Shown one piece after another: positions 7,840-59,406 of a DNA stretch of 64,000 bases. This stretch comes from Ostrea edulis. Taxonomy: Eukaryota. A program made the position numbers and the translations under genes. The notes under the pieces were generated by a model, which searched no databases, had not been told where the DNA came from, and saw only the letters and a program-made list of their open reading frames with translations. The stretch's first letter is position 1. Every line of letters begins with the position of its first letter. Where the stretch lies: assembly GCF_947568905.1 (NCBI RefSeq), contig NC_079165.1:86118001-86182000 (forward strand), read 5' to 3'.

Positions 7840-9069
7840 TCATGAACCGATGACTGCCATCATCACAAGATATAGTAAATTATTAGAAACCAATAAAACA
7901 ACGAAAAGAATTAAAAACAGTCTGTCGAAAGCTAATCCAACATCGTTCCAAGTGACGGTCCATGCGACGTCACTGCCCGCGTCATCGTTTACACATTCTA
8001 CTGCAGATTTCTCCGTATCCCCATACTTTTGTATTGACGCTGTAGATATTTTACGTTCACGACACATTATCACGCCGCGGGTGAAACTCTTCAGTCTGGC
8101 GGAAATCTCCTTGTCGTCTGCTTTATGGTAGAAATTCATCCCAAATACCACGGCTATCATCATAGCACAACCAAGCAACATGTCGACCAAAAGTTTGTAA
8201 GTTAAATACGATACATTCGGTTCTGATGCCTCGGGTAGCTTGTCTTGTATTATTGTGAGGAACACAGCGACAGCCAGTAAAACGGTGATAGAAAATCCCA
8301 TCCTCTCTCCGGACTCCACGGGCAAAACGAACACTAAAATCTGAAGAAAATTCATGAAACAGATAGGTAGAATTAACCCGGCGATGTAATACTCGGTTCT
8401 TCGCTTCATGTTGATTTCCAGTCGAAGTTCCTCAAAATTATACACGTTGACGTGATAATATAGACGAGTGCTTGTGAGAGACCACAATCCATTCTCCTCG
8501 TACAACAGCATGTCAAATGTAGAAGATCTTGGCCTAAGAATAATATCTGACGGGCTTAGAGCGGGAACATAAAATTTCAAGGTGCACGTCTGCGAATCAA
8601 ACGGGTAATAAGTGACGTCAGCATCACAAGTGGCTTCATAAAGGTCAGGAGGTGAACATGAAACTTCTCCTTTAGAGGATACTTTGCAAGACATTCCGTC
8701 TAATAGTACCTTTCTAAATTTATCGTATGGATTCATCAAAACCAGAAAAGGTACCCAAATATCAGATATAAAGAGTGTTGTATCGTACAGGTCTCCACCA
8801 TAGTTGGTAGGGTTCCATGCGAGTCGGGAATCTGTCCATTGAAGACTAAGTGATCCCACAATACCAATTTTACTTAGTCCTTCCGAAAAGTCTTTCAAAC
8901 TGGTCAGGAAGAATTTGATATCAATTTGCAGGGGGGTCGTTCTGTCGATTCCTGGCCTTACCCTTCGATCGTATCCCGGGGTAAGGTTTGTGTGAAGTTG
9001 TGTCTGATCTTGGATGGTATATCCGTCCACACAGCAGAAATAACATAAAACTATCAGCAAGCCTCTCAT
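7840..9069 (-). CDS. Single-exon nAChR-like Cys-loop ligand-gated ion channel subunit, non-alpha (gene A, 409 aa)
   Basis: Signal peptide MRGLLIVLCYFCCVDG; Cys loop CDADVTYYPFDSQTC (C-x13-C); M1-M3 with ESGERMGFSITVLL; M4 after WNDVG; no vicinal CC in loop C; start set at ATG 9069 by comparison with paralogs. Confidence 0.93.
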   Translation of the reverse strand: MRGLLIVLCYFCCVDGYTIQDQTQLHTNLTPGYDRRVRPGIDRTTPLQIDIKFFLTSLKDFSEGLSKIGIVGSLSLQWTDSRLAWNPTNYGGDLYDTTLFISDIWVPFLVLMNPYDKFRKVLLDGMSCKVSSKGEVSCSPPDLYEATCDADVTYYPFDSQTCTLKFYVPALSPSDIILRPRSSTFDMLLYEENGLWSLTSTRLYYHVNVYNFEELRLEINMKRRTEYYIAGLILPICFMNFLQILVFVLPVESGERMGFSITVLLAVAVFLTIIQDKLPEASEPNVSYLTYKLLVDMLLGCAMMIAVVFGMNFYHKADDKEISARLKSFTRGVIMCRERKISTASIQKYGDTEKSAVECVNDDAGSDVAWTVTWNDVGLAFDRLFLILFVVLLVSNNLLYLVMMAVIGS

Positions 9070-10199
9070 GTTTGTATTGTGGTATCTTCCAGTTGCTGTG
9101 GATATCACAGAAACATCGTGTTTTTTTAAAATAGATTTGTTTATCGTGTATATTTAGATACATCCGACTGGAAGGGAGCTTTAAAGCTTGGCAAAAGTTT
9201 CGTTTGACTCGCCTCGGCCAATTTAGAATTTCAACGTATTTTACATTAACATATGATGTCTCTTAAGTAAATGCCCTATATCTTGTTATTGATAGAGGAC
9301 GTTTTCCACTGTAAATACTGTGTAAATAAGTATTTTAGTAAAATAGTATTTGTCATCCATGGAAATATAAACGAAATGAAAACTGCCTGTCCCTTTCAAT
9401 TTTCTATCAATATTAAATCTTTTACATGTACAGTATACTTTTGGATACAGTCCGACTCTACAAAGGTTTAGTGACTGGCTCACGTGCGATAATATTTAGA
9501 TTTATTTAAAAAGAAATCCATTTTCAAACACATCGACTAGATTTAGCGAGCTTTCACTGTTCCGAAGTAGGAAATTCGCTGTCTATTGCCAGTCATGTGA
9601 GGGAATCACGGCTTCGCTCTATCCAATATGAATCAAAAGTGACACGCAAAACACAACAAAGGTTAAAGAACCCAGTGTTGAAATGTAACGAGATTTTAAT
9701 AAGGTTGTCAATAGACATCAGAATGCATAACTGAAATCCAGTGAACGTGAAATATCTGCAATGTGGTCCTGTATAACACCACCTTGTATGATAGGTACTT
9801 CAATACTGTATCATAACCGACACCTCTATTTATGATGTAGAATTGGCTGGTATTGGAAATCAATTTACAGAATCAAAAGGTGATTCGACAGAGCCTGATG
9901 TTGAGCTATCTAGGACGACATTTAGTTACAGGTAGCTTTAAAGGTACCGATAGATAAGATTTATTTGCTATCAAACTAACATGGTTAATGTATCTATAGC
10001 GGCGGTGTACAACTAATTAAGTAATGTAAACTAAATGTAATTTCACTCTACACTAAAGCCTATATACCGAAATTAAATGTCATTCTTGGTTAAAACACTT
10101 GGCTATTTTCGGTCAACCTTATTTGTAGAATGTATGTATTGCACGCGCCTACTCTCCACGAGGTCAGAAAGAAAATAATGACGTCGGTAAGTTTTAACA

Positions 10200-11260
10200 T
10201 TAAGTACATGAAAAGTAAACATAACAAACAGTGATCAATTTCACAAATCCTATAAAGAATACAAAATATTGAGAGTAGGACAGTCAAGAACCTCTGGACA
10301 CATCAGAAGTGGGATCAAGTGCCTAGGAGGATTACCGGGTAAGCATCCTCTGTTGACCAGTCACACCCGCCTAGATGCCCCTATCTTGTCAGATCAGGTA
10401 AACGGGGTAATATGTAGTAAAAAATCAGTATGTAATGTTTGGCCCAATAATTGGTATGAAGCACGTCAGAAAGCATTCAGCCTAACGACAGTTTGTATTT
10501 GTATATCTACAAATTCTATATATTTCACATGTATAGGAATCATGACAAACAGGATGATTTCAGCTTCTCCATCGTCAACTTCCCATATTTATGTAGAATA
10601 TTCCATTATATCCTGCATATCGTGTTTATATATCTCAACTGATTCGATATGCAAGAGCTTGTTCTGCGTATAGTCAGTTTTTAAATCGACGTAAGCTACT
10701 GACAAACAAGTTGATGGTACAAGGGTTTCAGCAGTCTCGATTGAAGTCAGCATTTCGCTAATTCTATGGTCGTTATAACGATCTAGTTCGTCAATACCAC
10801 CTATCATTGGGTCAATTGCTGTCTGGCGTGTTTCATACCGATTGGTAAGCCGTTTTTGGCACACTGATTTTGACTGCGGTAACTCCGTTTACCTGAACAG
10901 TATATAAGGCTCACCGCGGGTGTGACCGGTCGACAGGGGATGCTTATTCCTCCATAACATACTGGTAGTATTGATATCTGTATCAAAATTTAATGTAAAC
11001 AATTAAACATGTATACATCTTTAATGTAAAAATTCGAACCAAAATTCGAGGGAAAAAAAAACAAAAACTCGAAATCAAAAATACCACGGAATCGTCCACT
11101 TCTGCTTCATACTTAGATATTTTTATTGAGAATAGATATCAACGGTAAACTAACAACTCAACTTTATGATAAACGGAATTTCAACTTCTCCATTGTCAAC
11201 ATCCGATATTTATGTACCATGTAATATCCCATTATCACCTGCATATACATTCTCTACCCA
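10200..11260. mobile_element. Penelope-like fragments in both orientations
   Basis: Remnants of DINGKLTTQLYDKR and FSFSIVNFPYL...SQLIRY motifs plus the shared tail sequence. Confidence 0.6.
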
Positions 11261-11819
11261 GAGTTCCGTGCGCTCCTCGCACTACACCTCTGTCAACGGC
11301 TTTTTACAGAAATCTTGTAAAAGTTTCTATTATCTAACATTTATGTTTTGGACTATTATGATATGTTTTTGGTCCAGTTAAATTGATGCTTACTGTAAAT
11401 TGTTTAAAATCACCGTTTTCTGATCATAAATTTGGAACTACTTCGTAATATGCGTATGAATGTAGGACATACACGTGGTGGCGATTTAAATGGAAACATG
11501 GAATCAAAAGTAAGAAAGGCTGTAAAAATACGATAAAACTTGTAAAATATGAGACAAACAGCTAAATGTAAATATGCACTTATTAAAGTGTCAGTGGGTT
11601 ATGAAAAGAGTCTGGTGTATCACCTGTTGCCAGGATTTTTAAAGGGAAAGGAAACCGAAAATGATTGTTTATATCATGTGATTATATTGTCACGTGATTT
11701 CAAGTGTTGACAGAGGTGTATGTGAAGCTTGCGTAACACGCCCTCTGGTGAGAGAATGCTGCATATGGTGTTTATACGAATACCTCTTAACTGATTCGAT
11801 ACACAAAAAATTGCGCTCA

Positions 11820-12030
11820 AAATCACACGGCCTCTCACCTCTGTCGGCGCGAATCCCGCTCGCGCCGGTAAGTGAGAAAGTTTCCCAGTTTTCTTTCGGA
11901 AGGTCGGTTGTCTCTTCCCAGGTACATTGTATCGGCGCTCTCTTTTCCACCAATAAAAACTGGGCGCCACCAGATAACTGAAAAATTGTTGAGTGTGGCG
12001 GGAAAACACAAATCAATCAATCAATCGATA
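11820..12030 (+). mobile_element. 5'-truncated tRNA-derived SINE (V-domain-like)
   Basis: gcgaatccc B-box-like remnant; core ttccaccaataaaaactgggcgccaccagataactgaaaaattgttgagtgtggcg; (aatc)n tail. Confidence 0.6.
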
Positions 12031-13948
12031 CACAAAAGCTTGTTCTGTGTATGATCAGTTTTTAAATCGAGGTATTAAGATATATCAACAACGTTTTATC
12101 TATTAATAATAATTTTAATTCATATGTCGCTTCGATATATACCTGTGAACTCGATATTAAAGACACCACAGACTCGGCCACGTCTGTTTCATACTAGGAA
12201 AGGACAAGGTACGTTTGGGGCCAAATGGCCCCGTGTCCAAATTAAATGATATTCCTCAAAATTCTTTCATATGGTGTATACTTCCATAAAATGTTGATGA
12301 TGTCTTCGTAAAAAGCTTTACTTATGTATAATACATATGTAGATACAGTATAGTTTACGATAACGTTGTGCCATTTTGACGTTACTTTATGCGACGTCAT
12401 GAACAAGAAAGCTATGTCATGAACTCAATATGAAAATAATCCATTTTATGTCGCCATATGCTCAAAGTTTTATTAAACAAATGTGCACTATGATTTTTAT
12501 TTGAAAAGTTTAATTGATTTTTTCCGAAAGTTTTAACCAATTGTAAATGATTCGATGCGGCGGGTGCTGTAATTTGAAGGACGATTAGTGTAATTGTATC
12601 TAAGAATTGTAGAGCAACCCATATATATTCATTCAAATTTAACATTGTATTTACATTTGCATCCACTTTGCATTGTTTTAATCTAAATTAAATGAATATT
12701 ATATATGTACGAAGCGCGTGGTTATTCTTGTGTGTATATGTACACTTTGTTCTTTTTTTCAAGCGCACTAAATGTTTTCAGCGAAGGAACACGCACTAAC
12801 CAATGCTACATTGGATTGTACATGTATTAAAAAGAACATGAAATTCATTAAGAATATATGTGAAAAGAAATATTATAAAACAAACTTGAGAAGTTGTTTT
12901 TTTTTTTTAAAATTCAACACACGACAATCAGACCGAATGTGAACCTTATAGGATGTGATAAGATTTACAAACAATGTGATAAGTTATACACAAGAGTTGA
13001 CACTGACACCATGAAAAACCTAACATAGAATAATCTTGTCGGTATTATATTCAATGTTTTAGCATATACACTTGCATCTATTTACACTCTTTATTTGAAA
13101 AAAAATATACCGGTTCCTGACAATTGTCATTATATAAGAAATCTTTAAATGCATTAGTATTTACGCAAAGGAAAATAGTTTGAATCATAAATCATATTCA
13201 TTGTCTCAAACCACGTCCGAAGTCCGCATGGGAGAGGATCGGATATTTTTTTATCTTCCCCCTTCTACCTTTTGATACATGCCGATTTAGTCGGAGATAT
13301 GAAATAACCTTGGTTTCCTTGTCTAATAAATCATTCAACAATTCCTTTTCGGTCAGTTTCTAATGATGAATTAAGCAGAGACTGTCTATTAACAGTACCA
13401 AAGTCAATCACTATGACAGTGCATCAGCATATATAATGCCGTCAGTCAAAGATATTTTTATTTTCCAGCAATTGTCAAAATAATGAAAGGTGTAAGATCT
13501 AATCAGTTTTTGACACTAAGTTTTTTCACTATACTAGTGAAAAGGACTACTAGAATCTATAATTTACTAGTCCTGCTGATTTGTGACTAATCCGGCAGCT
13601 GAAAGTAGACGGCCGAGTCGCGATGCGAAGAGGGGAAGAGTGCGGGAGGGGCTTGTCCCCTCTTAAAGAGGTGGGGGTCCGAGGAAAATTCAAAATCTAG
13701 ATGCAAATTGTTCATTTGAGACAAATAAATGAAAATTTTATGACCAAATCTAGCCTATTTTTCCTGATTTTCTCGTCAAACCATCATATTTATGCTTGAA
13801 TATCATGAAGAATACGTCGATGTGTAGCATAGTACCGTACTTTGTCGAATATGATATGCAATTTTTTCAAGGGTTTTTGGTGTGAGAAAGGGGTGCGCAT
13901 TGTTTACCAAATAGTTTTTTTCCAGGTGAAACTCGGCGGTTAAGTAAT

Positions 13949-14825
13949 GTTTTACTCAAAGAAAAGGGGCATATTGGTTTGCACCTGTCGGTCGGTCGGT
14001 AGACCACATATTGTCCGATCAATATCTTGAGAACCATTTACTTGATCGTAATGGTATTTCATATGTGGGTTGGTTATGAAAAGAAGAAGACCTCTATTGT
14101 TTTTTAGGTCAAAAGGTTAAAGGTCAAGGGTCAATCTACTCTGGACATTGGAATATACTGTTTGCTCAATATCTTTCTTGAGAACCCTTTGCTTGACAGA
14201 CATCAAACTTGGTACACTGGTACATCTTCAGGAGAAGACGACCCCTTTTGATGTTCAGGTCACATGGTCAAAGGTCAAGGGTGAAACTGGACATTGGAAT
14301 ATACTGTCTGCTCAATGTCTTGAGAACCCTTTGCTTGACAGATATTAAAATTGGCACACTGGTACATCATCACGGGAAGATGACACCCATTGATTTTGAG
14401 GCCGTGTGGTCAAAGGTCAAGGGTCAAACTGCACATAGGAATATACAGTCCGCTCAATATCTTGAGAACCCTTTGCTTGACACATCAAACTTGGTACATT
14501 AGTATGAGAAGATGGCTCCTATTCATTTTGAGGTCACATGGTCAAAGGTCAAGAGTCAAACTGACATAGGAATATACTGTACATTCAATAGCGTGAGAAC
14601 CCTTTGCTTGACAGACATCAAACTTGGTACACTGGAACATATTCAGGAGTTGATGACCCCTATTGATTTTTAGGTCACATGGTCAATCCACTCTTGACAT
14701 AGGAAGATATTGTCTGCTCAATATTTTGAATTGATTATACTACTCTCAATTAAATGATGTGTGTGTATAACCCTTTTCAATTTTGCACCATGGGGTGCAT
14801 ATGTGTTTTACAAACATCTCTTGTT
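13949..14825. mobile_element. Helentron-type non-autonomous element with internal ~140-150-bp tandem repeats
   Basis: ggggcatattg...(gtcg)n start; about 4 repeats containing ggtcaaaggtcaag and cttgagaaccctttgcttgaca; end ggggtgcatatgtgttttacaaacatctcttgtt; absent from copy 2. Confidence 0.7.
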
Positions 14826-15390
14826 GAAAATAGATATTAACGGCAAACTAACAACTTGACTTTAAGATAAAAAGGGGATTTCAGCTTCTTCATCGTCAAC
14901 TTCCCATATTTATGTAGCAATATTCCATTATCTCCTGCATATGGTGTTCATATCTTACAACTGATTCGATATGGAAAATCTTGTTCTGCTTATGATCAGT
15001 TTTTAAATCGAGGCAGGCTACTGACAAATAAGTCGATAATGCAGGGATTTCAACAGTCTCATTTAAAGTCAGCATATCGTAAATTATATAGTTGTTATAG
15101 CAATCTAGATTGCCAATACAACGTATCAATGGGTCAAATGCTGTTTAACGTGTTTCATACCGATTGTTTGGCCGTTCTTGGCACATTGATTTTGTCTAAG
15201 GATAACTCCGTTTACCTGAGCAAGATATAGCGCTCAAGGCGGGTGTCACCGGTTGACAGGGGATGTTTACTTTCTCAGACACCTGATCCCACCTCTGGTA
15301 CATCCAAGGGTCCATGTTTGCCCAACTCTCTATTTTGTATTGCTTATAAGAGTTATGAGATTGATCACTGCTCCTTATCTTCACATTTCA
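14826..15390 (+). mobile_element. Penelope-like fragment (RT thumb region plus tail)
   Basis: Reads IDINGKLTT...FSFFIVNFPYLCSNIPLSPAYGV; ends gagttatgagattgatcactg...tttcat; paralog at ~57375-57910. Confidence 0.65.
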
Positions 15391-15650
15391 TCTTTAATGT
15401 AAGTAAGTAATTTTTATTCAAAATCGAAACTATTTACAATAAACAAGTAACTTGAACTAAAAAGCTCTTTAACCGATTAGATACCATAAAACACATTTTA
15501 AAACATTATACATACATGCACAGTAATAGAACTTTGAGGTGATGAGGAATCGAATCGGACACTAACAAGTAAGTACGCTGGACAGTTATTTGTGAGTGTG
15601 TTGGGGTATTGATGACACAGAACGATTTTAAATTCTGGTTAATCAAGTCG

Positions 15651-16880
15651 TCATGAACTCATTATTGCCATAGCTGCAAGGTATATAAAGTTACTAGAAA
15701 TCAGTAAAACAAGGAAAAGGATTATACACAACTTGTCGAAAGCTAATCCGACATCATTCCAAGTGACGTTACTTGTGACGTCACTGTCTGCGTCATCGTT
15801 TACACATTCTACTGCAGATTTCTCCGTATCCCCATACTTTTGTATTGACGCTGTAGATATTTTACGTTTACGACACATCATCACGCTGCGTGTGAAACTC
15901 TTCAGTCTGGCGGGAATTTCCTTGTCGTCTGCTTTATGGTAGAAATTCATCCCAAGTACCACGGCTATCACCATAGCACAACCAAGCAACATGTCGACCA
16001 AAAGTTTGTAGGTTAAGCACGATACATTCGGTTCTGATGCTTCGGGGAGTTTGTCTTGTATTATTGTGAGGAACACAGCAATAGCCAGTAAAACGGTGAT
16101 AGAAAATCCCATCCTCTCTCCGGACTCCATGGGCAAGGAGAACACTAAAATCTGAAGAAAATTCATTAAAGCAATTGGTAAAAGTAATCCGGCGATGTAA
16201 TACGCGGTCCTTCGCTTCATGTTGATTTCCAATCGAAGTTCCTCAAAATTATGGACGTTGATATGGTAATATAGTCGAGTGCTTTTGATAGACCACAATC
16301 CATTTTCCTCATACAACAACATGTCAAATGTAGAAGAATTTGGTCTCAGAATAATATCTGATGGGTTTAGAGCGGGAACGTAAAATTTTAATGTGCACGT
16401 CTGCGAATCAAACGGATAATAAGTGACGTCAGCATCACAAGTGGCTTCATAAAGATCAGGTGGTAGGCACGAGACTCTTCCGTTATCATATACTCTGCAA
16501 GACATTCCATCTAAAAGCACTTTCCGAACTTTATCGAATGGATTCATCAAAACCAGGAAAGGTGTCCAAATATCAGATATAAAAAGCGATGTTTCGTACA
16601 GGTCTCCACCATAGTTGGTAGGGTTCCATTGGAGTAGGGAATCTGTCCATTCAAGACTAAGTGATCCCACAATACCAATTTTACGTTGTCCTTCTGAGAA
16701 TTCCTTCAAACTCGTCAGGAAGAATTTGATATCAATTTGCAGGGGGGTCGTTCTGTCGATTCCTGGCCTTACCCTTCGGTCGTATCCCGAGGTAAGGTTT
16801 GTGTGAAGTTGTGTCTGATCTTGGATGGTATATGCATATACACACCAGAAAAAACATAAAACGACCAATAAGCCCCTCAT
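15651..16880 (-). CDS. Single-exon nAChR-like Cys-loop channel subunit, non-alpha (gene B, 409 aa)
   Basis: Same architecture as gene A: signal peptide, C-x13-C loop, GER motif before M2, four TM segments, uninterrupted ORF. Confidence 0.93.
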   Translation of the reverse strand: MRGLLVVLCFFWCVYAYTIQDQTQLHTNLTSGYDRRVRPGIDRTTPLQIDIKFFLTSLKEFSEGQRKIGIVGSLSLEWTDSLLQWNPTNYGGDLYETSLFISDIWTPFLVLMNPFDKVRKVLLDGMSCRVYDNGRVSCLPPDLYEATCDADVTYYPFDSQTCTLKFYVPALNPSDIILRPNSSTFDMLLYEENGLWSIKSTRLYYHINVHNFEELRLEINMKRRTAYYIAGLLLPIALMNFLQILVFSLPMESGERMGFSITVLLAIAVFLTIIQDKLPEASEPNVSCLTYKLLVDMLLGCAMVIAVVLGMNFYHKADDKEIPARLKSFTRSVMMCRKRKISTASIQKYGDTEKSAVECVNDDADSDVTSNVTWNDVGLAFDKLCIILFLVLLISSNFIYLAAMAIMSS

Positions 16881-17055
16881 TTTGAAGTCGGCACTATCTA
16901 CCGATACAGGTGGATAATTTTACTGAAATTATGGTCGCAGTTTGGTAAATTGAAACCTTCGATAAATGTCAGATGATCGGTTCTTCTTGTCCATTTAAAG
17001 ATTTCAACATTTCAGTATTTGGCGTCTCTTGTTATGAGTGACGTTCTCGCCTTAA

Positions 17056-17359
17056 GGTAGTACTCTACATCGTCATAATAGCTGACTTCCTTTAAAAATA
17101 TGGATGAAAAAATCGATATCAGCAATATTTGACTTTTCCTTTTCCATTGAAATGCCTAGCCGAGTAGCTCAGTAGGTTAGAATACCGACTGCTGAACTGT
17201 AGGTCGCAGTGGTTTTAAAAAAAATTTCATGTTACCTTCTACTAAAACTGTATTTTTTGACAAAATAAAGTAAATTTGAAAATATTCAAATTCAAAATAT
17301 TGTTGTACATATCCTCCACTTTTCATCTACATCAAATTTCTCTGGTGTAGCGTACATCC
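17056..17359. mobile_element. Kolobok-like non-autonomous DNA transposon (304 bp) with an internal tRNA-like segment
   Basis: TTAA at 17052-17055 and TGAA at 17360-17363; GG...CC termini with short imperfect TIRs; empty site tcttaatgttgatac near 59588. Confidence 0.7.
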
Positions 17360-18506
17360 TGAATGTTGATACAAAACGTTTTACAATTCAGTGAAGTAGG
17401 TGTTCATATAAAGTACCTTTTTATGTCCGTGCCTGTCGTGTAATAATAATTAGTTGGTTTCTGATTTGAAGTTGCAGAGTTTGAAAATATCGCTTCGGGC
17501 TGGATTGTTCATACAACAGAAACAGTTTTCGGTATAACAATTCAACCCTTTGTAATTACTAAAATTAAATGGTTGGGAGAAAGCTCCACATTTACAAAAA
17601 ATAACAAATAACGGGTTGTTGTTTTTTCATACAACATGACCATCCACCATATAATCAATTTCGTGGTTTGTAATTGCTAAAGCCAAGCTACACCTGAGGA
17701 AAAATAACAAATATGCTTATTTTCTTTGTATGGTGCTTGATTATCCATATGAGGTTTTTTTCCACTCATTGACGGATCTCACCAGTTGAAGTGCTGAAAC
17801 TTTTTTTTACTTATTCACAGAGCCGAATACAGGAAGAACCCTTTCTTACTTTTGAGATTTCCTTGTTCATATCCCCTTTAACCTCCCTGTGTGGGGTGCT
17901 AATATTTCATAATGATTGTTGATAAATATCGTTAATTAGTGGCGATCCAAATTTTCGAGTGAACACTAGAGAGCAGTATTATGTTATGCGCAACCAGACC
18001 GCCAGTATCAAGATATTTATGCTTCTTTAAGTGTCCCCTTATTCATAATATTACATTTTCAAAGATCTACTCAAGCCGGTCTATTAACTACCAATCCCAT
18101 TCCCATCAATATGACCCCTCCCCCAAAGATTTATCTGTCTCTATTAATATCCTATGTCAAGTCTTTCACGAGATACTTTCGCAAGAATCCCTATCGCCAA
18201 TGATTTGATTAAATTACGTGGGAACACAGCCGGGTTCGTTTAAAATTAAAGTTCAATCAGTGTGGATGTTTTCACGGCGGTCCCTGGGTAGGAAATCCGC
18301 TGCTTATTGTCAATTTTGTGTCCTTTGTATTCAATGCATAAATAAAATTTACGTGACTTCCAAAAGAGATATGAGAGTTAAAGAACCCAATATTGAAATT
18401 AAACAAGTTTTAAATTAAGCTGTCAATAGACATGTCAACGCAGACCTCATGATAATTTGGTATTGGCATTGTGGCGCTATTAATGGGATACAATGTATAG
18501 TAACAT

Positions 18507-18509
<3 letters not shown>

Positions 18510-18557
<48 letters not shown>
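18510..18557. repeat. (CT)n microsatellite
   Basis: Pure dinucleotide run; shorter paralog near 62345. Confidence 0.95.
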
Positions 18558-18559
<2 letters not shown>

Positions 18560-18664
18560 ACCCGCGTCAGATTTAAAAGGGACATTAGCTGTGAAAATGA
18601 TGACGACCATTTTTGTCAAAATACATGTATCTCAATGGCATAGAAATATATTTTAAAGACTATT

Positions 18665-19760
18665 AAAACATTTTTGTTATGCAATCCTTTGTCTTTTTAG
18701 GCTTTTATATAGACGAAAGTCCACTTGTAGTGAAAAGGTTACCTGTAGGTGTCCAATAAGTTAACAATTGCTGTCCATTATTTTTGAAGAATGGAAAGAT
18801 ACTGTCCGTTCTTAAAAATAATGGACAGTAATTGTCAACGTATTGGACAGTGCCAGGTAAACCCAATAACTTGTTAGACGTCTACAGGTAGGCTGAAAAT
18901 AAGAGAAAGACATTACATTTGTCAAAGAGATACAAATTTAATTTGAAATTCCCAACAAGTAAGAATCAACACAGATATCGGAAAAATCACTGAAACATTT
19001 AAAAGCGATATTTCCCTTTATTAAAATTATATGCTTCAACTCGTAAGATTCACAATTTTTTTTAAATTTGAAAGACATATTTCCATACTGTATTTGAATT
19101 CTGCTGGATTCAGAGGTACATTCCGAAACTTCTTCACAACGTTTTTTTTTATGTTTTCTTTATTAGCATATCCTAATTCTGAATGATTATTTTCGCTTTC
19201 ATGAATAATTTCATTTCATGAGATAGGCGTATTGGGTTCTTTTGGCTGGAGTTAATTATTTCCTCATCCAAATATTCGAAAACACAATGCTTTTCAGATC
19301 AAAATTTGGCTCCATAACTTTCTCACCCTCCATATCCAGAATATAACACATATTTGTAATACTTTCACTGAAATCCTTAAATTTTGATCGTGCAATGAAA
19401 ATGCTCTCCCCATCAGAGGAAGACATGTTGATATGGCTCAGTACTATAGATAGAGTGAATATAAACCTGCAGTAGAAGACTACTTACCTGACACTGTCCA
19501 ATAAGTGAACAAAAGAAACAGAATTCTACGCAAGACTGGTTATATTGTCAGACTATTCAAAATAGCTTTATTCATAATTATCATTGCCAGTGGGTTTACC
19601 TGGGTCTGTTCATTCTTAGAACAAAAGATGTAATGTTTTAAGTAGGATATAAACCTGAAACTGTCCATTCTGTGAGAGAAAGAACTGATCTCGGCCCCAC
19701 GGGCCTCGATCAGTTCTTTCTCTCACAGAATGGACAGTTTTTGGCTTATATCCTTTACAT
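18665..19760. mobile_element. Fold-back non-autonomous insertion with two palindromes
   Basis: Absent from copy 2 (62480-62495 is contiguous); imperfect palindrome at 18738-18862; palindrome at 19644-19754 with 33-bp perfect arms. Confidence 0.6.
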
Positions 19761-49110: not shown

Positions 49111-49400
49111 CGTACTTTATATTCCAATAGACAGAGATAATAGCTTACTTTATATCCCAATATTCAAGTAGATAGAGAGATGATATCGTACTTTATATTC
49201 CAATAGACAGAGAGAGAATAGCGTACTTTGTATTTTCCTGACTCATTTGTAATAAACAGAGAGAATAGCTTTATATTCCAAAAGACAGAGAGAGTAACTT
49301 ACTTTATATTCCAATAGACAGAGAGAGTAGCTTACTTTATGTTCCAATAGACAGAGAGAGGATAGCGTACTTTATATTCCAATAGTCAGAGAGGATAGCT
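45451..49400. repeat. Minisatellite, ~30-34-bp unit, ~4 kb, with embedded (GA)n expansions
   Basis: Same unit as 261-1358; long (GA)n runs near 45672, 46803 and 49053. Confidence 0.95.
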
Positions 49401-49625
49401 TGTTTTGTGATGCATATTTTATTCAGAGGTGTGAAATCACAGGAAAAAAAAAATTACGAATGAGATTTGTATAAAATTAAACTCATTTCCAGCGCACTGA
49501 ATAGAAAATGGAAAGTTCACTTGCATTTTATCTCCGTCAACATGTCAATTGATGATACATAAACACGAGAATTAGCTATTAAAATGCATGTTTGTTGACC
49601 CTCAAACTAATTATGTCAGTATGCT

Positions 49626-52144: not shown

Positions 52145-52342
52145 ACTAGTCAATTATATCATCATGTGAGTCAATTATACCATATTAGTCAATTATATCA
52201 TCATGTGAGTCAATTATATCATCAAGTGAGTCAATTATATCATCATGTGAGTCAATTATATCATCAAGTGAGTCAATTATATCATCAAGTGAGTCAATTA
52301 TATCATCATGTGAGTCAATTATATCATCATGTGAGTCAATTA
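52145..52342 (+). repeat. Short copy of the 18/21-bp (SQLYHH) minisatellite
   Basis: About 10 units; same right flank (cttttgattcagtacaataaaaatg) as at 4020. Confidence 0.92.
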
Positions 52343-52389
52343 TATCATACTAGTCAATTATAGTCTTTTGATTCAGTACAATAAAAATG

Positions 52390-53040
52390 TGAAGATTACG
52401 AACAGTGACCAATCTAAAAAAAACTATCATGAAGAATAACTAAGTAATAATAGAGCAAACACGGACCCCTGGACACACCAGAGGTGGGATCAAGTGTTTA
52501 GGGAGAGTAAACATACCCTATCGACCGGTCACACTTGCCATGAGCCCCATATTTTGATCAGGTAAACGGAATAATATGTAATTAAAATCAGTTTGTAAAA
52601 CACGGCCTGGCAATTGGTATGGAATACGTCTGACAGCCTTCGCCATAATGGCATGTTGTAACTGAAATTTACGAAAGCCCAGAAGGCCCTTTCGACATTC
52701 AGATTTTGAATCTCGAATGGGCTTTCGTGCAAATTAGATCGTTATAATAACGACCATATAATTTAAGAAATGCTGACTTTGAAAGAGACTGTTGATGCCT
52801 TACGAACTTATTTGTTAGTTGCCTATCTCGATTATTAAATACATAACAAGCTCTCGCGCATCCAACCAACTGTGAGACATACCGGTAAATACCATATGAA
52901 GTTGATGAATGGAATATTGCTAAAAACATTGGAAGTTGACAATAAAAAGCTGTTTGTTTAAAATTTGAGTTGTTAGTGTTCCGTTAATGTCCATGTTCAA
53001 TAAACCTCCAAATGGACCTCGCATGAAAATATAGTGATCT
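52390..53040 (-). mobile_element. Penelope-like fragment (paralog of 4050-4700)
   Basis: Collinear with 4050-4700. Confidence 0.6.
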
Positions 53041-53319
53041 TTCATTTCATGCTAGGACTATATTCACTAGGGATTGACATTCTCAAAAGGCTATATACAT
53101 GTATGTGTATTGTCTTCGTTCTTGCACAATATCATTCCAGTTAGAATATCATGAACTCATATCCTAAATTGGATCAAACTAATTGCATGTGCAGATGTTT
53201 TAGTCTGAAGAGTTTTTCAAAAATGGGATCCAAGTTTAAGTTTTATGAATTCTATTCAAATCTAAATTGTGGAATGTAAAACCATTATTTCCCTAACACA
53301 AATATACCCACAAAACTAC

Positions 53320-53500
53320 ATCCTACACGAACAACAGATAGGTGCCTATAATCCTACACGAACAACAGATAGGTGCATAAAATCCTTCACGGACAAGAGG
53401 TAGGTGCATAGAATCCTACACGAACAGGATATAGGTGCCTAAAATCCTACAAGAGCAAGATAGGTGCATAAAATCTTTCACGAACAAGAGATAGCTGCAT
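53320..53500. repeat. 30-bp minisatellite (paralog of 6265-6560)
   Basis: aatcctacacgaacaacagataggtgc units. Confidence 0.88.
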
Positions 53501-53534
53501 TAACTTTTGATTTTAACCTGCTTCTACATAAACC

Positions 53535-53820
53535 TAGGAAGTGATTGTTCCTTCGTCAAGCGCTCAGCATTTAGAAGTGAGAATCACAGGTATTTCGGAT
53601 ATGACCTTAACAACGGTGGGGGTGCCCCGTGTCCCGGCAAGCGCTGGCACGTTAAAGAGCCCACGCTGCTACCACCAGACCTTGATACTAAATTTCTGGT
53701 ACTTCACCTACATCAGGTGTCGTCTCAATATGAGTGAAAAAATTATTGCCAGACGTAGAGCAAAAAAAAAAAAAATTAAAAAAAAAAAAAAAAAAAAAAA
53801 TAATACAACAAACAAACCTA
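53535..53820 (+). mobile_element. SINE fragment with A-rich tail
   Basis: gtgattgttccttcg...gagaatcac...gatatgacctt...tatgagtgaaaaatt followed by poly-A and acaaacaaac. Confidence 0.6.
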
Positions 53821-54001
53821 CTTAGTTTTCATCAATTCATTTGAATGCTAATTTGCATATATTACCATATAAATGTAAAGCATTGATCACAATTTTTGAG
53901 ATGAGAAAAGATTTAAGGATACATAAAAAATGTCTCTGTTGGACAAATAACTTCATATAGAAAAGCAGCTTTTAAAAATGGTCGAAGTTCCACTCAAATT
54001 A

Positions 54002-55231
54002 TCATGAACCGATGACTGCCATCATCACAAGATATAGTAAATTATTTGAAACCAATAAAACAAGGAAAAAAAATAAAAACAATCTGTCGAAAGCTAACCC
54101 GACATCGTTCCAAGTGACAGTCCATGTGACGTCACTGCCCGCGTCATCGTTTACACATTCTACTGCAGATTTCCCCGTATCCCCATACTTTTCTATTGAA
54201 ACTGTAGATATTTTACGTTTACGACACATCATCACGCCGCGTGTAAAACTCTTCAATCTGGCGGGAATCTCCTTGTCGTCTGTTTTATGGTAGAAATTCA
54301 TCCCAAATACCACGGCTATCATCATAGCACAACCAAGTAACATGTCGACCAAAAGTTTGTAAGTTAAATACGATACATTCGGTTCTGATGCCTCGGGTAG
54401 CTTGTCTTGTATTATTGTGAGAAAAACAGCGACAGCCAGTAAAACGGTGATAGAAAATCCCATTCTCTCTCCGGACTCCACGGGCAAGGCGAACACTAAA
54501 ATCTGAAGAAAGTTCATGAAACAGATAGGTAGAATTAACCCGGCGATGTAATACGCGGTCCTTCGCTTCATGTTGATTTCCAGTTGAAGTTCCTCAAAAT
54601 GATACACGTTGACGTGATAATATAGACGAGTGCTTGTGATAGACCACAATCCATTCTCCTCGTACAACAACATGTCAAATGTAGAAGATTTTGGCCTAAG
54701 AATAATATCTGACGGGTTTAGAGCGGGAACATAAAATTTCAATGTGCACGTCTGCGAATCAAACGGGTAATAAGTAACGTCAGCATCACAAGTGGCTTCA
54801 TAAAGGTCAGGAGATGAACATGAAACTTCTCCTTTAGAGGATACTTCGCAAGACATTCCATCTAATAGTACCTTTCTAAATTTATCGTATGGATTCATCA
54901 AAACCAGAAAAGGTACCCAAATATCAGATATAAAGAGTGTTGTATCGTACAGGTCTCCACCATAGTTGGTAGGGTTCCATGCGAGTCGGGAATCTGTCCA
55001 TTCAAGACTAAGTGATCCCACAATACCAATTTTACTTAGTCCTTCCGAGAATTCCTTCAAACTCGTCAGATAGAATTTGATATCGATTTGCAGGGGGGTC
55101 GTTCTGTCGATTCCTGGCCTTACCCTTCGGTCGTACCCCGTGGTAAGGTTTGTGTGAAGCTGTGTCTGATCCTGTATGGTATATCCGTTCACACAGCAGA
55201 AATAACATAAAACGACCAACAAGCCTCTCAT
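54002..55231 (-). CDS. Single-exon nAChR-like Cys-loop channel subunit, non-alpha (gene A', 409 aa)
   Basis: Intact ORF, paralog of gene A with the same flanks. Confidence 0.93.
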   Translation of the reverse strand: MRGLLVVLCYFCCVNGYTIQDQTQLHTNLTTGYDRRVRPGIDRTTPLQIDIKFYLTSLKEFSEGLSKIGIVGSLSLEWTDSRLAWNPTNYGGDLYDTTLFISDIWVPFLVLMNPYDKFRKVLLDGMSCEVSSKGEVSCSSPDLYEATCDADVTYYPFDSQTCTLKFYVPALNPSDIILRPKSSTFDMLLYEENGLWSITSTRLYYHVNVYHFEELQLEINMKRRTAYYIAGLILPICFMNFLQILVFALPVESGERMGFSITVLLAVAVFLTIIQDKLPEASEPNVSYLTYKLLVDMLLGCAMMIAVVFGMNFYHKTDDKEIPARLKSFTRGVMMCRKRKISTVSIEKYGDTGKSAVECVNDDAGSDVTWTVTWNDVGLAFDRLFLFFFLVLLVSNNLLYLVMMAVIGS

Positions 55232-56339
55232 GTTTGTATTGTGGTATCTTCCAGTTGCTGTGGATATCTCAGAAACATCATGTTTTTTAAATAGATTTGT
55301 TTATCGTGTATATTTAGATACATCCGACTGGAAGGGAGCTTTAAAGCATGACAAAAGTTTCGTTTGACTCTCCTCGGCCAATTTAGAATTTCGATGTATT
55401 TTACATTAACATATGATGTCTCTTAAGTAAATGCCCTATATCTTGTTATTGATAGAGGACGTTTTCCACTGTAAATACTGAGTATTTTAGTAAAATAGTA
55501 TTTGTCATCCATGGGAATATAAACAAAATAAAAACTGCCTGTCCCTTTCAATTTTCTATCAGTGTTAAATCTTTTACATGTACAGTATTCTTTTGGAAAC
55601 AGTCCGACTCTACAAAGATTTAGTGACTGATTCACGCGGGAAAATATTTATTTATTTAAAAAGAAATCCATTTTCAAACACAGCGACTATATTAAACGAG
55701 CTTTCACTGTTCCGAAGTAGGAAATCCGCTGTCCATTGCCAGTCATGTGAGGAAATCACGGCTTCGTTTTATCCAATATGAATCAAAAGTGATACGCAAA
55801 ACACAACAAAGGTTAAAGAACCCAGTGTTGAAATGTAACGAGATTTTAATAAGGTTATCAATAGACATCAGAATGCATAACTGAAATCCAGTGATCGTGA
55901 AATATCTGCAAGGTAGTCCTGTATAACACCACCTTGTATGATAGGTAATTCAATACTGTATCATAACCGACACCTCTATTTATGATGTTGAGTTGGCTGG
56001 TATTGGAAATCAATTTACAGAATTACAAGGTGATTCGACAAAGCCCGACGTTGAGCTGTCTAGGACGATATTTAGTTACAGGTATCTTTAAAGGTACCAA
56101 TAAACAAAATTTAATTGCTATCAAACTAACATGGTTAATGTATCTATAGCAGCGGTGTATAACTAATTAAGTAATGTAAACTAAATCTAATTTCACTCTA
56201 CACTAAAGGCTATACACCGAAATTAAATTTCATTCTTGATTAAACCTCTTGGCTATTTTCGGTTAACCTTATTTGTAGAATGTATGTATTGCACGCGCCT
56301 ACTCTCCACGAGGTCAGAACGAAAACAATGACGTCGGTA

Positions 56340-57910
56340 AGTTTTACAATGGAGTACATGAAAAGTAAACATAACGAACAGTGATCAATTTCACAAATCC
56401 TATAAAGAATACAAAATATTGAGAGTAGGACAGTCAAGAACCCCTGGACACATCAGAAGTAGGATCAAGTGCCCAGGAGGATTAAACATCCTCTGTTGAC
56501 CAGTCACACCCGCCGTGATGCTCCTATCTTGTCAGATCAGGTAAACGGGGCAATATGTAGTCAAAAATCATTATGTAATGTTTGGCCCAATAATTGGTAT
56601 GAAACACGTCAGAAAGCATTCAACCTAACGACAGTTTGTATTTGTATATCCACAAATTCTATATATTTCACATGTATAGGAACTAAATTCAAGTTTGGTA
56701 ATGTACGAAACAATCAATATTATGCAAGAAGTTGTGGAAACATAGCAGACAGTATCCTAACGAGAAAGTCACGTGCTCATCTGTCAGCTCTTTCCGGAAA
56801 GAAAGGGTGTCAAAACACGCGTGGCATTTTCAGAATAGTTTCTTTGTATGCAAATTTAACTAAGGTTTACGTTTCATTTTATTTCATTAAATAACATACT
56901 GGTAGTAGTGATATATGTATAAAAATTTAACGCAAACAATTAAAAATGTATATATCTTTAATGTAAAAATTCGAACTTTAAAAATTCGAGAAAAAAGCTC
57001 GAAATTAAAGATACCACGGAGTCGTTCACTTCTGCTTCATACTTAGATATTTTATTGAAAATATATATTAACGGCAAACTAACAACTCAACTGTATGATA
57101 AACGGGATTTCAACTTCTCCATTGTCAACATCCGATATGTATTATGTAATATCCCATTATCACCTGCATATGGTGTTTATATGAGTACCTCTAAACTGAT
57201 TCGATACGCAAGAGCTTGTTCTGCATATGATAAGTTTTTAAATCAAGGCATTAAGATATATCGACAACGTTTTATCTATTGATAATAATTTTCATTCATA
57301 TGTCGATTCGATATATACATGTGAACTCGATATTAAAGAAACCAGAGTCGCCCACGGCAGTTTCATATTAAGGAATTTTATTGAAAATAGATATTAACGG
57401 CAAACTAGCAACTCGACTTTATGATAAAAGGTGGGATTTCAGCTTCTTCATCGTCAACTTCTCATATTTATGTAGCAATATTCCATTATCTCCTGCATAT
57501 GGTATTCATATCTCTCAACTGATTCGATACGCAAAATCTTCTTCGGCTTATGATAAGTTTTTTTTAAATCGGGACAGGCTACCGACAAATAAGTTGATAA
57601 TGCAGGGATTTCAACAGTCATTCAAAGTCAGGATTTCGTAAATTATATGGTCGTTATAAGAATCTAGATTGTCATACAACGTATCAATGGGTCAAATGCT
57701 GTCTGACGTGTTTCATACCGATTGTTTGGCCGTTCTTGGCACACTGATTTTGTCTAAGGATAACTCCGTTTACCTAATCAAGCTCACGACGGGTGTGACA
57801 GGGAACCATTACTTCTCTCAGACATATGATCCCACCTCTAGTATATCCAGGGATCCGTGTTTGCCCAACTCTCTATTTTGTATTGCTTATAAGAGTTATG
57901 AGATTGATCA
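56340..57910. mobile_element. Penelope-like fragments (paralogs of 10200-11260, 12040-12190 and 14826-15390)
   Basis: ORFs 57055-57282 and 57381-57641 read INGKL.T.LYDKR.DF.F.IVN...SPAYG...LIRYA. Confidence 0.65.
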
Positions 57911-58176
57911 ATGTAAAAATGCAAGGAAGTAATTTTTATTCAAAATCGGAACTATTTACAATAAACAAATAACTTGAGCTAAAAAGCTCTTTAACCGATT
58001 ATATACCATAAAACATATTACAAATTGTATATATACATGCACAGTCATAAAACTTTCAGGTGATAAGGATTCGATTCGATTCTGAAACTAACAAATAAGT
58101 ACGCTGGACAGTTATTTGTGAGTGTGTTGGAGTATTGATGACATCGAACGATTTTAGATTATGGTTAGTCAAGTCG

Positions 58177-59406
58177 TCATGAACTCATTATTCCCATAGT
58201 TGCAAGGTATATAAAGTTACTAGAAATCAGTAAAACAAGGAAAAGTATTATACACAACTTGTCGAAAGCTAATCCGACATCGTTCCAAGTGACGTTACTT
58301 GTGACGTCACTGTTTGCATAATCGTTAACACATTCTACTGGAGTTTTCTCCGTATCTCCATACTTTTCTATTGACGCTGTAGATATTTTACGTTTACGAC
58401 ACATCATCACGCCGCGTGTAAAACTCTTCAGTCCGGCGGGAATTTCCTTGTCGTCTGTTTTATGGTAGAAATTCATCCCAAATACCACGGCTATCACCAT
58501 AGCACAACCAAGCAACATGTCAACCAAAAGTTTGTAGGTTAAGCACGATACATTCGGTTCTGATGCCTCGGGTAGCTTGTCTTGTATTATTGTGAGGAAA
58601 ACAGCGACAGCCAGTAAAACGGTGATAGAAAATCCCATCCTCTCTCCGGACTCCACAGGTAAGGCAAACACTAAAATCTGAAGAAAATTCATTAAAGCAA
58701 TTGGTAAAAGTAATCCAGTGATGTAATATGCGGTCCTTCGCTTCATGTTGATTTCCAATCGAAGTTCCTCGAAATTGTACAGGTTAACATGGTAATATAG
58801 ACGGGTGCTTTTGATAGACCACAATCCATTCTCCTCGTACAACAACGTGTCAAATGTAGAGGAATTTGGTCTCAGAATAATATCTGATGGGCTTAGAGCG
58901 GGAACGTAAAATTTTAATGTGCACGTCTGCGAATCAAACGGGTAATAAGTGACGTCAGCATCACAAGTGGCTTCATAAAGATCAGGTGGTAGGCAGTTGA
59001 CTTTTCCGTAATCATATACTTTGCAAGACATTCCATTTAAAAGCACTTTGCGAACTTTATCGAATGGATTCATCAATACCAGAAAAGGTACCCAAATATC
59101 AGATATAAAGAGTGTTGTATCGTACAGGTCTCCACCATAGTTGGTAGGGTTCCATGCGAGTCGGGAATCTGTCCATTCAAGACTAAGTGATCCCACAATA
59201 CCAATTTTACTTAGTCCTTCCGAGAATTCCTTCAAACTCGTCAGATAGAATTTGATATCGATTTGCAGGGGGGTCGTTCTGTCGATTCCTGGCCTTACCC
59301 TTCGGTCATACCCCGTGGTGAGGTTTGTGTGAAGCTGTGTCTGGTCTTGGATGGTATATCCGTCCACACACCAGAAAAAACATAAAACGACCAACAAGCC
59401 CCTCAT
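58177..59406 (-). CDS. Single-exon nAChR-like Cys-loop channel subunit, non-alpha (gene B', 409 aa)
   Basis: Intact ORF; B-type flanks and C-terminus with A'-type internal tracts. Confidence 0.93.
   Translation of the reverse strand: MRGLLVVLCFFWCVDGYTIQDQTQLHTNLTTGYDRRVRPGIDRTTPLQIDIKFYLTSLKEFSEGLSKIGIVGSLSLEWTDSRLAWNPTNYGGDLYDTTLFISDIWVPFLVLMNPFDKVRKVLLNGMSCKVYDYGKVNCLPPDLYEATCDADVTYYPFDSQTCTLKFYVPALSPSDIILRPNSSTFDTLLYEENGLWSIKSTRLYYHVNLYNFEELRLEINMKRRTAYYITGLLLPIALMNFLQILVFALPVESGERMGFSITVLLAVAVFLTIIQDKLPEASEPNVSCLTYKLLVDMLLGCAMVIAVVFGMNFYHKTDDKEIPAGLKSFTRGVMMCRKRKISTASIEKYGDTEKTPVECVNDYANSDVTSNVTWNDVGLAFDKLCIILFLVLLISSNFIYLATMGIMSS

What the first reader, a model, noticed from the sequence alone, without database searches (positions are those of the whole stretch)
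7840..59406. Tandem cluster of single-exon nAChR-like channels lacking the acetylcholine pocket: candidate chemosensory receptors
Seen in all four intact genes: loop D reads GSLSL(Q/E)W (no Trp at the usual position), loop A reads W(V/T)PFLVLMN (no Tyr), loop B reads LKFYVPAL instead of KFGSW.Y, and loop C has no vicinal Cys-Cys. The pore keeps GER at -2' to 0', Leu at 9' and Asp at 20', which points to a cation channel. Established: lophotrochozoans, including oysters, have large expansions of intronless nAChR-like genes, and cephalopod chemotactile receptors are nAChR-derived, tandemly clustered channels that lost ACh binding. Inference: these subunits may detect non-cholinergic or environmental ligands, as a parallel bivalve sensory family.
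Basis: partly seen in the sequence, partly recalled or inferred. Interest (0 to 1): 0.75.

Follow-up and report, generated by a model that had tools for sequence, protein, structure and literature searches.

The report
Oyster orphan nicotinic-like channel gene array
Four intact, intron-free flat-oyster genes encode nicotinic-receptor-like cation-channel subunits that have lost the usual acetylcholine pocket; they are one more array of a bivalve gene expansion already described, and a sensory role remains plausible but unproven.

Summary
The window (Ostrea edulis, OX387705.1:86,118,001-86,182,000) holds four uninterrupted 409-codon Cys-loop receptor genes, 85-94% identical.

New here:
- The array extends beyond the window: a fifth close paralogue lies 15 kb upstream.
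- The window's fifth, frameshifted copy belongs to a different subfamily.
- The four genes are a two-gene unit duplicated as a block.
- They form an oyster-only clade with Saccostrea and Crassostrea orthologues in conserved synteny.
- Pro replaces the loop B Trp across a wide oyster radiation.
- A loop E Cys pair co-varies as a disulfide would.
- Selection is purifying throughout (ML omega 0.15), including the former binding loops (0.16). This is unlike the diversifying pocket of cephalopod chemotactile receptors, which are also more distant in structure (Z about 22) than alpha7 (Z 31).
- The three C. gigas co-orthologues are expressed in labial palps, then gills, and in larvae, but not in muscle, mantle, haemocytes or gonad (Jiao 2019, Table S1).

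The chemosensory reading is therefore not refuted and not shown. A structural, beta1-like subunit role fits equally well. The expansion and the idea are both published, and this scan has already flagged several similar arrays elsewhere in this genome.

The parts
7840..9069 (-). g1, type A subunit gene (409 aa, single exon)
   Evidence: ORF and translation; Pfam LBD + membrane domains; 94% aa identity to g3
15651..16880 (-). g2, type B subunit gene (409 aa, single exon)
   Evidence: identical to RefSeq protein P0001; AlphaFold2 model with mean pLDDT 85.7 and a full pLGIC fold
54002..55231 (-). g3, type A subunit gene (409 aa, single exon)
   Evidence: covered by independent genomic DNA runs
58177..59406 (-). 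g4, type B subunit gene (409 aa, single exon)
   Evidence: 91% aa identity to g2
44218..45348 (+). Pseudogene of a different nAChR-like subfamily (P0028 type): three ORF pieces in three frames plus a 36-residue deletion in the M3-M4 loop
   Evidence: tblastn in three frames; ORF pieces; pieces 96%, 86% and 80% (gap included) identical to P0028 and only about 43% to g2
3808..18684 (.). Copy 1 of the duplicated two-gene block (g1 + g2 with flanks)
   Evidence: blastn: 3808-4726, 6022-6667, 7640-10539, 10954-11246, 12025-12200, 14821-17058, 17359-18684 match the second block in the same order at 83-94%
52145..62506 (.). Copy 2 of the duplicated two-gene block (g3 + g4 with flanks)
   Evidence: Same blastn result

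Best explanation
The window carries four of at least five recently duplicated paralogues of one oyster-specific branch of the nicotinic-receptor family.

Shown:
- Each gene encodes a complete pentameric ligand-gated channel subunit: signal peptide, beta-sandwich ECD with a canonical 13-residue Cys-loop, pre-M1 Arg, M2-M3 Pro, and a cation-type M2.
- The cation-pi Trp of loop B is Pro, the loop A Tyr is Met, the loop D Trp is Ser, and loop C is short with no Cys-Cys.
- All copies, including their former binding loops, are under purifying selection.
- The C. gigas co-orthologues are transcribed in labial palps, gills and planktonic larvae.

Inferred: the subunits assemble, alone or as A/B heteromers, into cation channels in the water-exposed ciliated feeding organs and in larvae. 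These channels would be gated by something other than ACh bound in the canonical way. Because the replacement loops are conserved across oyster subfamilies, the agonist is more likely one conserved ligand, endogenous or environmental, than a diversifying panel of cues. The ligand, the stoichiometry and the cell type are unknown.
For: - Complete domains and gating residues.
- The nearest solved relatives are cationic nAChRs.
- Box substitutions on both faces.
- Pro at the TrpB position, in a conserved Y-[VI]-P-G-[YF] motif, runs across the whole oyster radiation while outgroup nAChRs keep KFGSW.Y and CC.
- Pairwise dN/dS is 0.22-0.26. ML omega is 0.149 overall, 0.162 for loops and 0.050 for M1-M3.
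- The clade has 100/100 support with Saccostrea and Crassostrea orthologues, and synteny with a P0028-type neighbour is conserved.
- C. gigas OYG10020568/69/70 are the only genes with the same Cys-loop. About 90% of their summed organ RPKM lies in labial palp plus gill, and larval expression is 5-10 RPKM.
- Only 13 of 132 C. gigas nAChR genes keep the principal site (PMC6896357), so orphan subunits cannot all be accessories.
Against: - There are no expression data for the O. edulis genes themselves. The only runs found were genomic DNA.
- The link to the C. gigas genes rests on an exact, unique Cys-loop match plus the tree, not on full sequences.
- The palp sample may include nerve or cerebral ganglion tissue.
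- A palp-top profile is common, by my hand count about 23 of roughly 80 listed genes.
- Torpedo beta1 shows the same box losses yet works inside an ACh receptor.
- No ligand has been tested, and the related orphan Alpo4 has resisted deorphanisation (PMC10338036).
Confidence: 0.45

Rival explanations
1. They are structural (accessory) subunits of heteromeric ACh-gated channels. Like vertebrate muscle beta1 or neuronal alpha5/beta3, they would contribute no binding face but co-assemble with ACh-competent oyster alpha and complementary subunits, for example in cholinergic control of cilia in palps and gills.
For: - The top solved sequence hit is Torpedo beta1 (E 1e-42). It shares VLMN in loop A, lacks the loop B Trp (Tyr there), has Phe at the loop D Trp position and has no Cys-Cys.
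- The loops are conserved rather than diversifying, as expected for an assembly interface.
- C. gigas has ACh-competent alpha subunits available as partners.
Against: - Five near-identical copies, plus a wide oyster radiation of the same type, is a lot for a purely structural role.
- Over a hundred bivalve subunits lack the site while only 13 keep it.
- The replacement loop B motif is itself strongly conserved over the radiation, which suggests a retained site.
Confidence: 0.3
2. They are a contact or waterborne chemoreceptor family in the strict sense of cephalopod CRs. Paralogues would be tuned to different environmental molecules and expressed in sensory epithelial cells of palps, gills and larvae.
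For: - Same evolutionary recipe as CRs: nAChR-derived, intronless, tandem, ACh box lost, cation pore kept.
- Co-orthologues are expressed in particle-sorting organs and in larvae.
- Variation among paralogues is largest in the loop E hairpin: 8 of 17 positions vary, including the positions that by offset to alpha7 face the pocket (129, 131, 137, 139).
Against: - There is no diversifying selection. Loop omega is 0.16 and loop E 0.18.
- Loop enrichment of variable sites is not significant (OR 1.86, p = 0.076).
- Loops A, B and D are nearly invariant among paralogues.
- Only about 5 copies exist.
- Structurally the model is further from CRB1/CRT1 (Z 22.6 / 21.8) than from alpha7 (Z 31.2).
- Mantle expression is zero in C. 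gigas.
Confidence: 0.15
3. They are functionless retrocopies drifting towards pseudogenes.
For: Intronless genes often decay. One neighbouring copy of another subfamily is already broken. Jiao 2019 reports more silent genes among intron-poor nAChRs.
Against: Five intact ORFs; dN/dS of about 0.15-0.25 with M1-M3 at 0.05; orthologues and synteny kept across three oyster genera; co-orthologues transcribed.
Confidence: 0.03

Closest known systems
Bivalve/lophotrochozoan intronless nAChR expansion (Jiao et al. 2019, BMC Genomics 20:937, PMC6896357)
   Same: Intron-free genes in tandem arrays arising by stepwise lineage-specific duplication. Most members lack the conserved principal ACh site. Expression is organ-specific, centred on gill and palp, plus larval stages. 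The C. gigas co-orthologues OYG10020568-70 are in that paper's gene set.
   Different: That paper does not describe this subfamily specifically. Not described there: the fixed Pro at the loop B Trp position, the loop E Cys pair, the two-gene block duplication in O. edulis, and the conserved pairing with a P0028-type neighbour.
Cephalopod chemotactile receptors (octopus CRT1/CR518, squid CRB1; PDB 9e6b, 8eiz)
   Same: nAChR-derived, intronless, clustered, ACh box lost, non-selective cation pore type.
   Different: Not the same clade by similarity: Z 21.8-22.6 and 19-24% identity, against Z 31 and 25% for alpha7. The CR pocket is under strong diversifying selection (PMC11526382), whereas here the loops have omega 0.16. 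CRs have known ligands and sensory-cell expression; these genes have neither.
Alvinella pompejana Alpo4 (PDB 8bx5; PMC10338036)
   Same: Lophotrochozoan nAChR-like orphan without the loop C Cys-Cys. Unresponsive to ACh and 5-HT in the published screens. Similar fold (Z 24.7, 23% identity).
   Different: Alpo4 keeps the key aromatic residues, including the loop B Trp (W159). The oyster genes have Pro there and have also lost the loop A Tyr and the loop D Trp.
Vertebrate muscle nAChR beta1 subunit (Torpedo, PDB 2bg9_B / 4aq5_B)
   Same: Best solved sequence match (E 1e-42). Same loop A VLMN, no loop B Trp, no Cys-Cys, no loop D Trp, GE(K/R) pore.
   Different: beta1 is a single-copy, intron-rich gene with a defined structural place in an ACh-gated heteromer. 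These are intronless, multiplied and oyster-specific, about 25-30% identical to beta1, with a much shorter M3-M4 loop.

Membership tests
Pentameric ligand-gated (Cys-loop) channel superfamily | Neur_chan_LBD plus Neur_chan_memb domains, a 13-residue Cys-loop, four TM helices | tested here: met
   Pfam E 1e-36 and 1e-15 in all four genes. C148-x13-C162 with YPFD. AF2 model shows M1-M4 helices at pLDDT 85.7. Invariant gating residues R223, P279, L264-L265.
Cation-selective nAChR/5-HT3 branch | Gly-Glu-(Lys/Arg) at -2' to 0', Leu 9', acidic 20'; nearest relatives are nAChRs | tested here: met
   SGERMGF...LL...QDK in all copies. Top sequence and fold matches are muscle, alpha7 and alpha4beta2 nAChRs.
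ACh-binding alpha-type nAChR subunit (principal face) | Loop C Y-x-C-C, loop B Trp149, loop A Tyr93 | tested here: not met
   No Cys-Cys and a 6-residue shorter loop C; Pro169 at Trp149; Met112 at Tyr93.
ACh-binding complementary nAChR subunit | Loop D Trp55 | tested here: not met
   Ser73 at that position in all copies. The outgroup nAChRs keep Trp.
Bivalve intronless nAChR expansion (Jiao 2019) | Intron-free CDS, tandem array, bivalve-specific clade, non-conserved ACh site | tested here: met
   Uninterrupted ORFs equal to the RefSeq proteins. Array of at least 6 intact genes over 91 kb. Oyster-only clade. Loop table.
Cephalopod chemotactile receptors | Belongs to the CR clade (closer to CRs than to canonical nAChRs) | tested here: not met
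   CRB1 Z 22.6 at 19% identity and CRT1 Z 21.8 at 24%, against alpha7 Z 31.2 at 25%. No cephalopod protein among 123 hits. CR sequences could not be placed in the tree.
Cephalopod chemotactile receptors | Ligand pocket under diversifying selection | tested here: not met
   ML omega is 0.162 for loops and 0.177 for loop E, against 0.122 for the rest of the ECD. Site models were not run.
Cephalopod chemotactile receptors | Expression in peripheral sensory epithelium | tested here: inconclusive
   C. gigas co-orthologues are highest in labial palp, then gill, and near zero in muscle, mantle, haemocytes and gonad. The cell type is unknown and there are no O. edulis RNA data.
Cephalopod chemotactile receptors | Gated by hydrophobic or environmental molecules, not by ACh | not testable with these tools
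   Needs electrophysiology.

The most novel reading that the evidence does not exclude
The oyster-specific clade with the fixed loop B Pro and the loop E disulfide is a receptor for one conserved non-cholinergic cue. It would act in the ciliated particle-sorting epithelia (labial palps, gills) and in larvae. That would make it an ionotropic 'taste of particles' system that arose from nAChRs independently of cephalopod chemotactile receptors, with A and B subunits from the duplicated gene pair forming the heteromer.
Probability: 0.2. Interest if true: 0.7.

Novelty: new member of a known kind. Interest (0 to 1): 0.3.

Why it matters
Bivalves carry 100-200 nicotinic-like genes, and most cannot bind acetylcholine in the known way. 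What they do is an open question. A sensory role would parallel the octopus 'taste by touch' receptors and would bear on how filter feeders select particles and how larvae choose where to settle.

This array does not answer that question. It does offer a compact, well-defined candidate set for the decisive experiment:
- five near-identical genes in two subtypes;
- a conserved replacement pocket;
- co-orthologues expressed in palps, gills and larvae.

It also carries a caution: pocket loss alone does not separate an orphan receptor from a beta1-like structural subunit.

Tried and rejected
- **Expression from public reads.** The run search returned four runs of unknown type. Laying them showed even coverage of genes and intergenic DNA, with spikes only at repeats, so they are genomic DNA and say nothing about transcription.
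- **Short Logan contigs with the C. gigas orthologue**. They have variable ends and no common 3' end or poly(A), so I took them as genomic and not as evidence of expression.
- **Literature search by protein accession** found nothing.
- **Searching Jiao's supplement for the Cys-loop as a plain string** failed because the PDF stores one letter per cell. Reading the file solved this.
- **CR sequences in the tree.** No tool returned them as usable protein ids, and typing them from memory is not acceptable. I relied on structural ranks instead.
- **Model coordinates are not exposed.** The Cys128-Cys138 distance could not be measured. The disulfide rests on the DSSP hairpin register and on the paired Cys-to-Ser change in C. 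virginica.
- **Fifth copy as a member of this group:** rejected, because it is a P0028-type pseudogene.
- **Rfam scan of the window:** no hits.
- **The large representative protein search** was not used, because no claim here rests on an absence of relatives.
Full report
**What is there**

The window has four minus-strand ORFs of 409 codons: 7840-9069 (g1), 15651-16880 (g2), 54002-55231 (g3) and 58177-59406 (g4). All four hit Pfam Neur_chan_LBD (E about 1e-36) and Neur_chan_memb (E about 1e-15). Each starts with a signal peptide and ends after M4. The RefSeq proteins of Ostrea edulis are identical to these translations, so the annotated CDS is one exon.

The genes fall into two subtypes. Type A is g1 and g3 (94% aa identity), type B is g2 and g4 (91%), and A against B is about 85%. 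The AlphaFold2 model of g2 is confident (mean pLDDT 85.7). It shows the full pLGIC architecture, with only the M3-M4 loop disordered.

All the motifs read as stated in all four genes. The HMMER alignment to Torpedo alpha1 gives these equivalences:
- Tyr93 -> Met112
- Trp149 -> Pro169
- Tyr151 -> Leu171
- a six-residue gap over Cys192-Cys193
- Tyr198 -> Phe212

By the constant offset to alpha7, Trp55 becomes Ser73. M2 gives Gly-2', Glu-1', Arg0', Leu9' and Asp20'.

There are two refinements. The TyrC2 position keeps an aromatic residue (Phe). TyrC1 is ambiguous: Tyr or His at 210 in HMMER, a gap in MAFFT. The gating machinery is intact: the Cys-loop with YPFD, the pre-M1 Arg223, the M2-M3 Pro279 and Leu264-Leu265 are invariant across a 76-sequence alignment.

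**Genomic setting**

The window is OX387705.1:86,118,001-86,182,000.
- A fifth paralogue, P0004 (85% identical to g2), lies 14.9 kb before the window on the same strand.
- An intact gene of another nAChR-like subfamily, P0028 (48% to g2), lies 9.6 kb after the window on the + strand.
- The window's fifth copy (44218-45348, +) is a recent dead copy of the P0028 type. Its three pieces are in three frames, and it has a 36-residue deletion in the intracellular loop.

The array therefore spans at least 91 kb, with six intact genes and one pseudogene.

g1+g2 and g3+g4 are two copies of one block, and their flanks match in the same order at 83-94%. Between subtypes A and B, similarity stops within 3 nt of the CDS ends. 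Synonymous divergence is also mosaic: dS is 0.09 in the ICD, 0.64 in M4 and 1.2 in the signal peptide for g1 against g2. I read this as an older A/B split partly homogenised by gene conversion; that is an inference.

About 33 kb of transposon and satellite DNA separates the two blocks.

**Family position**

In an ML tree of 71 relatives, the four genes plus P0004 form an O. edulis-specific group (91/94). That group sits inside a 100/100 clade with Saccostrea and Crassostrea orthologues, which is itself nested in a radiation made only of oyster sequences (100/99). Cnidarian and nematode nAChRs lie far outside.

In S. echinata, S. cucullata and C. virginica the orthologue has a P0028-type gene (69-72% identical to P0028) as its immediate neighbour on the opposite strand. 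The pairing therefore predates the split of the oyster subfamilies.

The loop table shows three things:
- Only the outgroup sequences have KFGSW.Y and Cys-Cys.
- Pro at the TrpB position is fixed in a Y-[VI]-P-G-[YF] motif over the whole oyster radiation. The window genes are further derived (YVPAL).
- Cys128 and Cys138 are conserved in the nearest clade and are both Ser in the C. virginica orthologue.

DSSP places residues 128 and 138 opposite each other in the 127-131 / 135-138 hairpin of loop E. A disulfide clamp there is likely but not measured.

**Selection**

Pairwise dN/dS is 0.22-0.26 for all pairs, with dS of 0.13-0.32.

Among the five O. edulis paralogues, variable ECD sites are only weakly enriched in the six binding loops: 20 of 69 against 25 of 139 (odds ratio 1.86, p = 0.076). 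The variation is concentrated in the loop E hairpin, while loops A, B and D are almost invariant.

A codon ML analysis (GY+F3X4) of ten sequences from five oyster species gives these omega values:

| Partition | omega |
|---|---|
| All codons | 0.149 |
| Binding loops | 0.162 |
| Rest of ECD | 0.122 |
| M1-M3 | 0.050 |
| ICD | 0.243 |
| M4 | 0.190 |
| Loop E alone | 0.177 |

The former pocket is thus conserved, not diversifying. A partition average can hide a few selected sites, and site models were not available.

**Comparison with solved receptors**

By sequence, the best match is Torpedo beta1 (E 1e-42), followed by alpha1 and alpha7. By structure against non-redundant PDB chains:

| Chain | Z | Identity |
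|---|---|---|
| alpha7 nAChR | 31.2 | 25% |
| Muscle nAChR subunits | about 30 | 24-26% |
| beta2 nAChR | 29.8 | 24% |
| 5-HT3 | 27.9 | 24% |
| Alpo4 (annelid orphan) | 24.7 | 23% |
| Squid CRB1 | 22.6 | 19% |
| Octopus CRT1 | 21.8 | 24% |

These genes are therefore not chemotactile receptors; any sensory role would be convergent. In the same alignment, Torpedo beta1 shows VLMN in loop A, Tyr at the TrpB position, Phe at the TrpD position and no Cys-Cys. A genuine ACh-receptor subunit thus lacks the same residues.

**Expression**

The read tools gave only genomic DNA runs, so the O. edulis genes are untested.

In Jiao et al. 2019 (PMC6896357), supplementary Figure S2 lists the Cys-loops of the C. 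gigas nAChR genes. The exact loop of this clade, C-DADVTYYPFDSQT-C, occurs in only three consecutively numbered genes: OYG10020568, OYG10020569 and OYG10020570. This matches my C. gigas orthologues.

Table S1 gives these RPKM values:

| Gene | Mantle | Digestive gland | Gill | Adductor | Haemocyte | Labial palp | Female gonad | Male gonad |
|---|---|---|---|---|---|---|---|---|
| OYG10020568 | 0 | 0.90 | 4.76 | 0.10 | 0 | 9.33 | 0 | 0.16 |
| OYG10020569 | 0.06 | 1.81 | 5.06 | 0.20 | 0.06 | 15.86 | 0.60 | 0.19 |
| OYG10020570 | 0 | 0 | 0.16 | 0 | 0 | 1.63 | 0 | 0.03 |

The developmental series shows about 2-10 RPKM through the larval stages, falling by the juvenile stage.

Caveats:
- This is another species.
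- Ganglia were not sampled, and the cerebral ganglia lie at the palp base (my own knowledge).
- Palp-top profiles are common in this family, by my hand count about 23 of roughly 80 listed genes.
- The alpha7-like gene OYG10012304 is broadly expressed, which argues mildly against ganglion carry-over as the explanation.

**What is known already**

Jiao 2019 reports all of the following:
- the expansion itself, with 99-217 genes in bivalves;
- the intronless tandem arrays;
- gill-dominated expression.

A 2026 preprint (PMC13174522) describes molluscan clades with substituted binding residues and 'CR-like' sequences in bivalves. It explicitly raises independent transitions to new ligands and an ionotropic chemosensory role. 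Alpo4 is a published lophotrochozoan orphan.

This scan has already flagged several similar arrays elsewhere in this genome, and earlier follow-ups judged them ordinary members of the known expansion. I reached the same class from my own tests.

**Verdict**

No sensory function is shown, and the conserved loops and the beta1 precedent keep a structural-subunit role alive.

My ranking is:
- orphan, non-canonically gated cation-channel subunits acting in palps, gills and larvae: 0.45
- beta1-like accessory subunits of cholinergic heteromers: 0.30
- CR-style tuned chemoreceptors: 0.15
- decaying copies: 0.03

I class this as a new member of a known kind, of modest interest.

Noticed in passing
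window 19871-34391: A large retroelement lies between the two gene blocks. It has a reverse transcriptase ORF (30582-31730), a tyrosine recombinase/integrase ORF (32288-33232), and terminal direct repeats 19871-20090 and 34152-34391 at 91% identity. A MULE-transposase-like ORF (25548-26561) lies inside it and may be a nested insertion. Another reader of this scan called it a Ngaro-like YR retrotransposon.
   Followed up: partly
window 1848-4017 (and 52148-52362): A 21-nt satellite of about 108 copies. Its long spurious ORFs (1909-3024, 3049-3756) give weak, false Pfam hits to SNAP, DUF7708 and Syntaxin. A 10-copy remnant sits at the matching place of the second duplicated block.
   Followed up: partly
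window 301-1362 and 45450-49401: A 33-35-nt satellite (unit containing AGACAGAGAGGATAGCTTACTTTATATTCC), about 32 copies at the first site and about 100 at the second. The second array starts directly after the pseudogene.
   Followed up: no
window 56350-57950 (copies at 10556-10953, 14877-15269, 41868-42304, 57435-57885): A very high-copy interspersed repeat with about 330-bp internal periodicity. Summed word depth in four genomic DNA runs is 1e5-1e6 here, against about 10-300 in the genes. A copy lies beside each receptor gene, and also in the P0004 locus (L001:5270-7419). It has no Rfam match.
   Followed up: partly
window 7840-9072 vs 15651-16883: Similarity between subtype A and B genes stops within 3 nt of the CDS ends. 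dS is mosaic along the gene: 0.09 in the ICD, 0.64 in M4 and 1.2 in the signal peptide. This suggests gene conversion confined to parts of the coding sequence.
   Followed up: partly
L012:2337-3584, L013:324-1541 and 4699-5916, L014:4791-6020: In Saccostrea echinata, S. cucullata and Crassostrea virginica the orthologue of the window genes is flanked, on the opposite strand, by a P0028-type nAChR-like gene (69-72% identical to P0028). The two subfamilies therefore form an old syntenic pair.
   Followed up: partly
window 39387-40208, 24360-25349, 26958-27782, 29822-30799: ORFs of 273-329 aa with no Pfam hit. The last three lie inside the retroelement and may be its gag-like or accessory genes. 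The first is unexplained.
   Followed up: no
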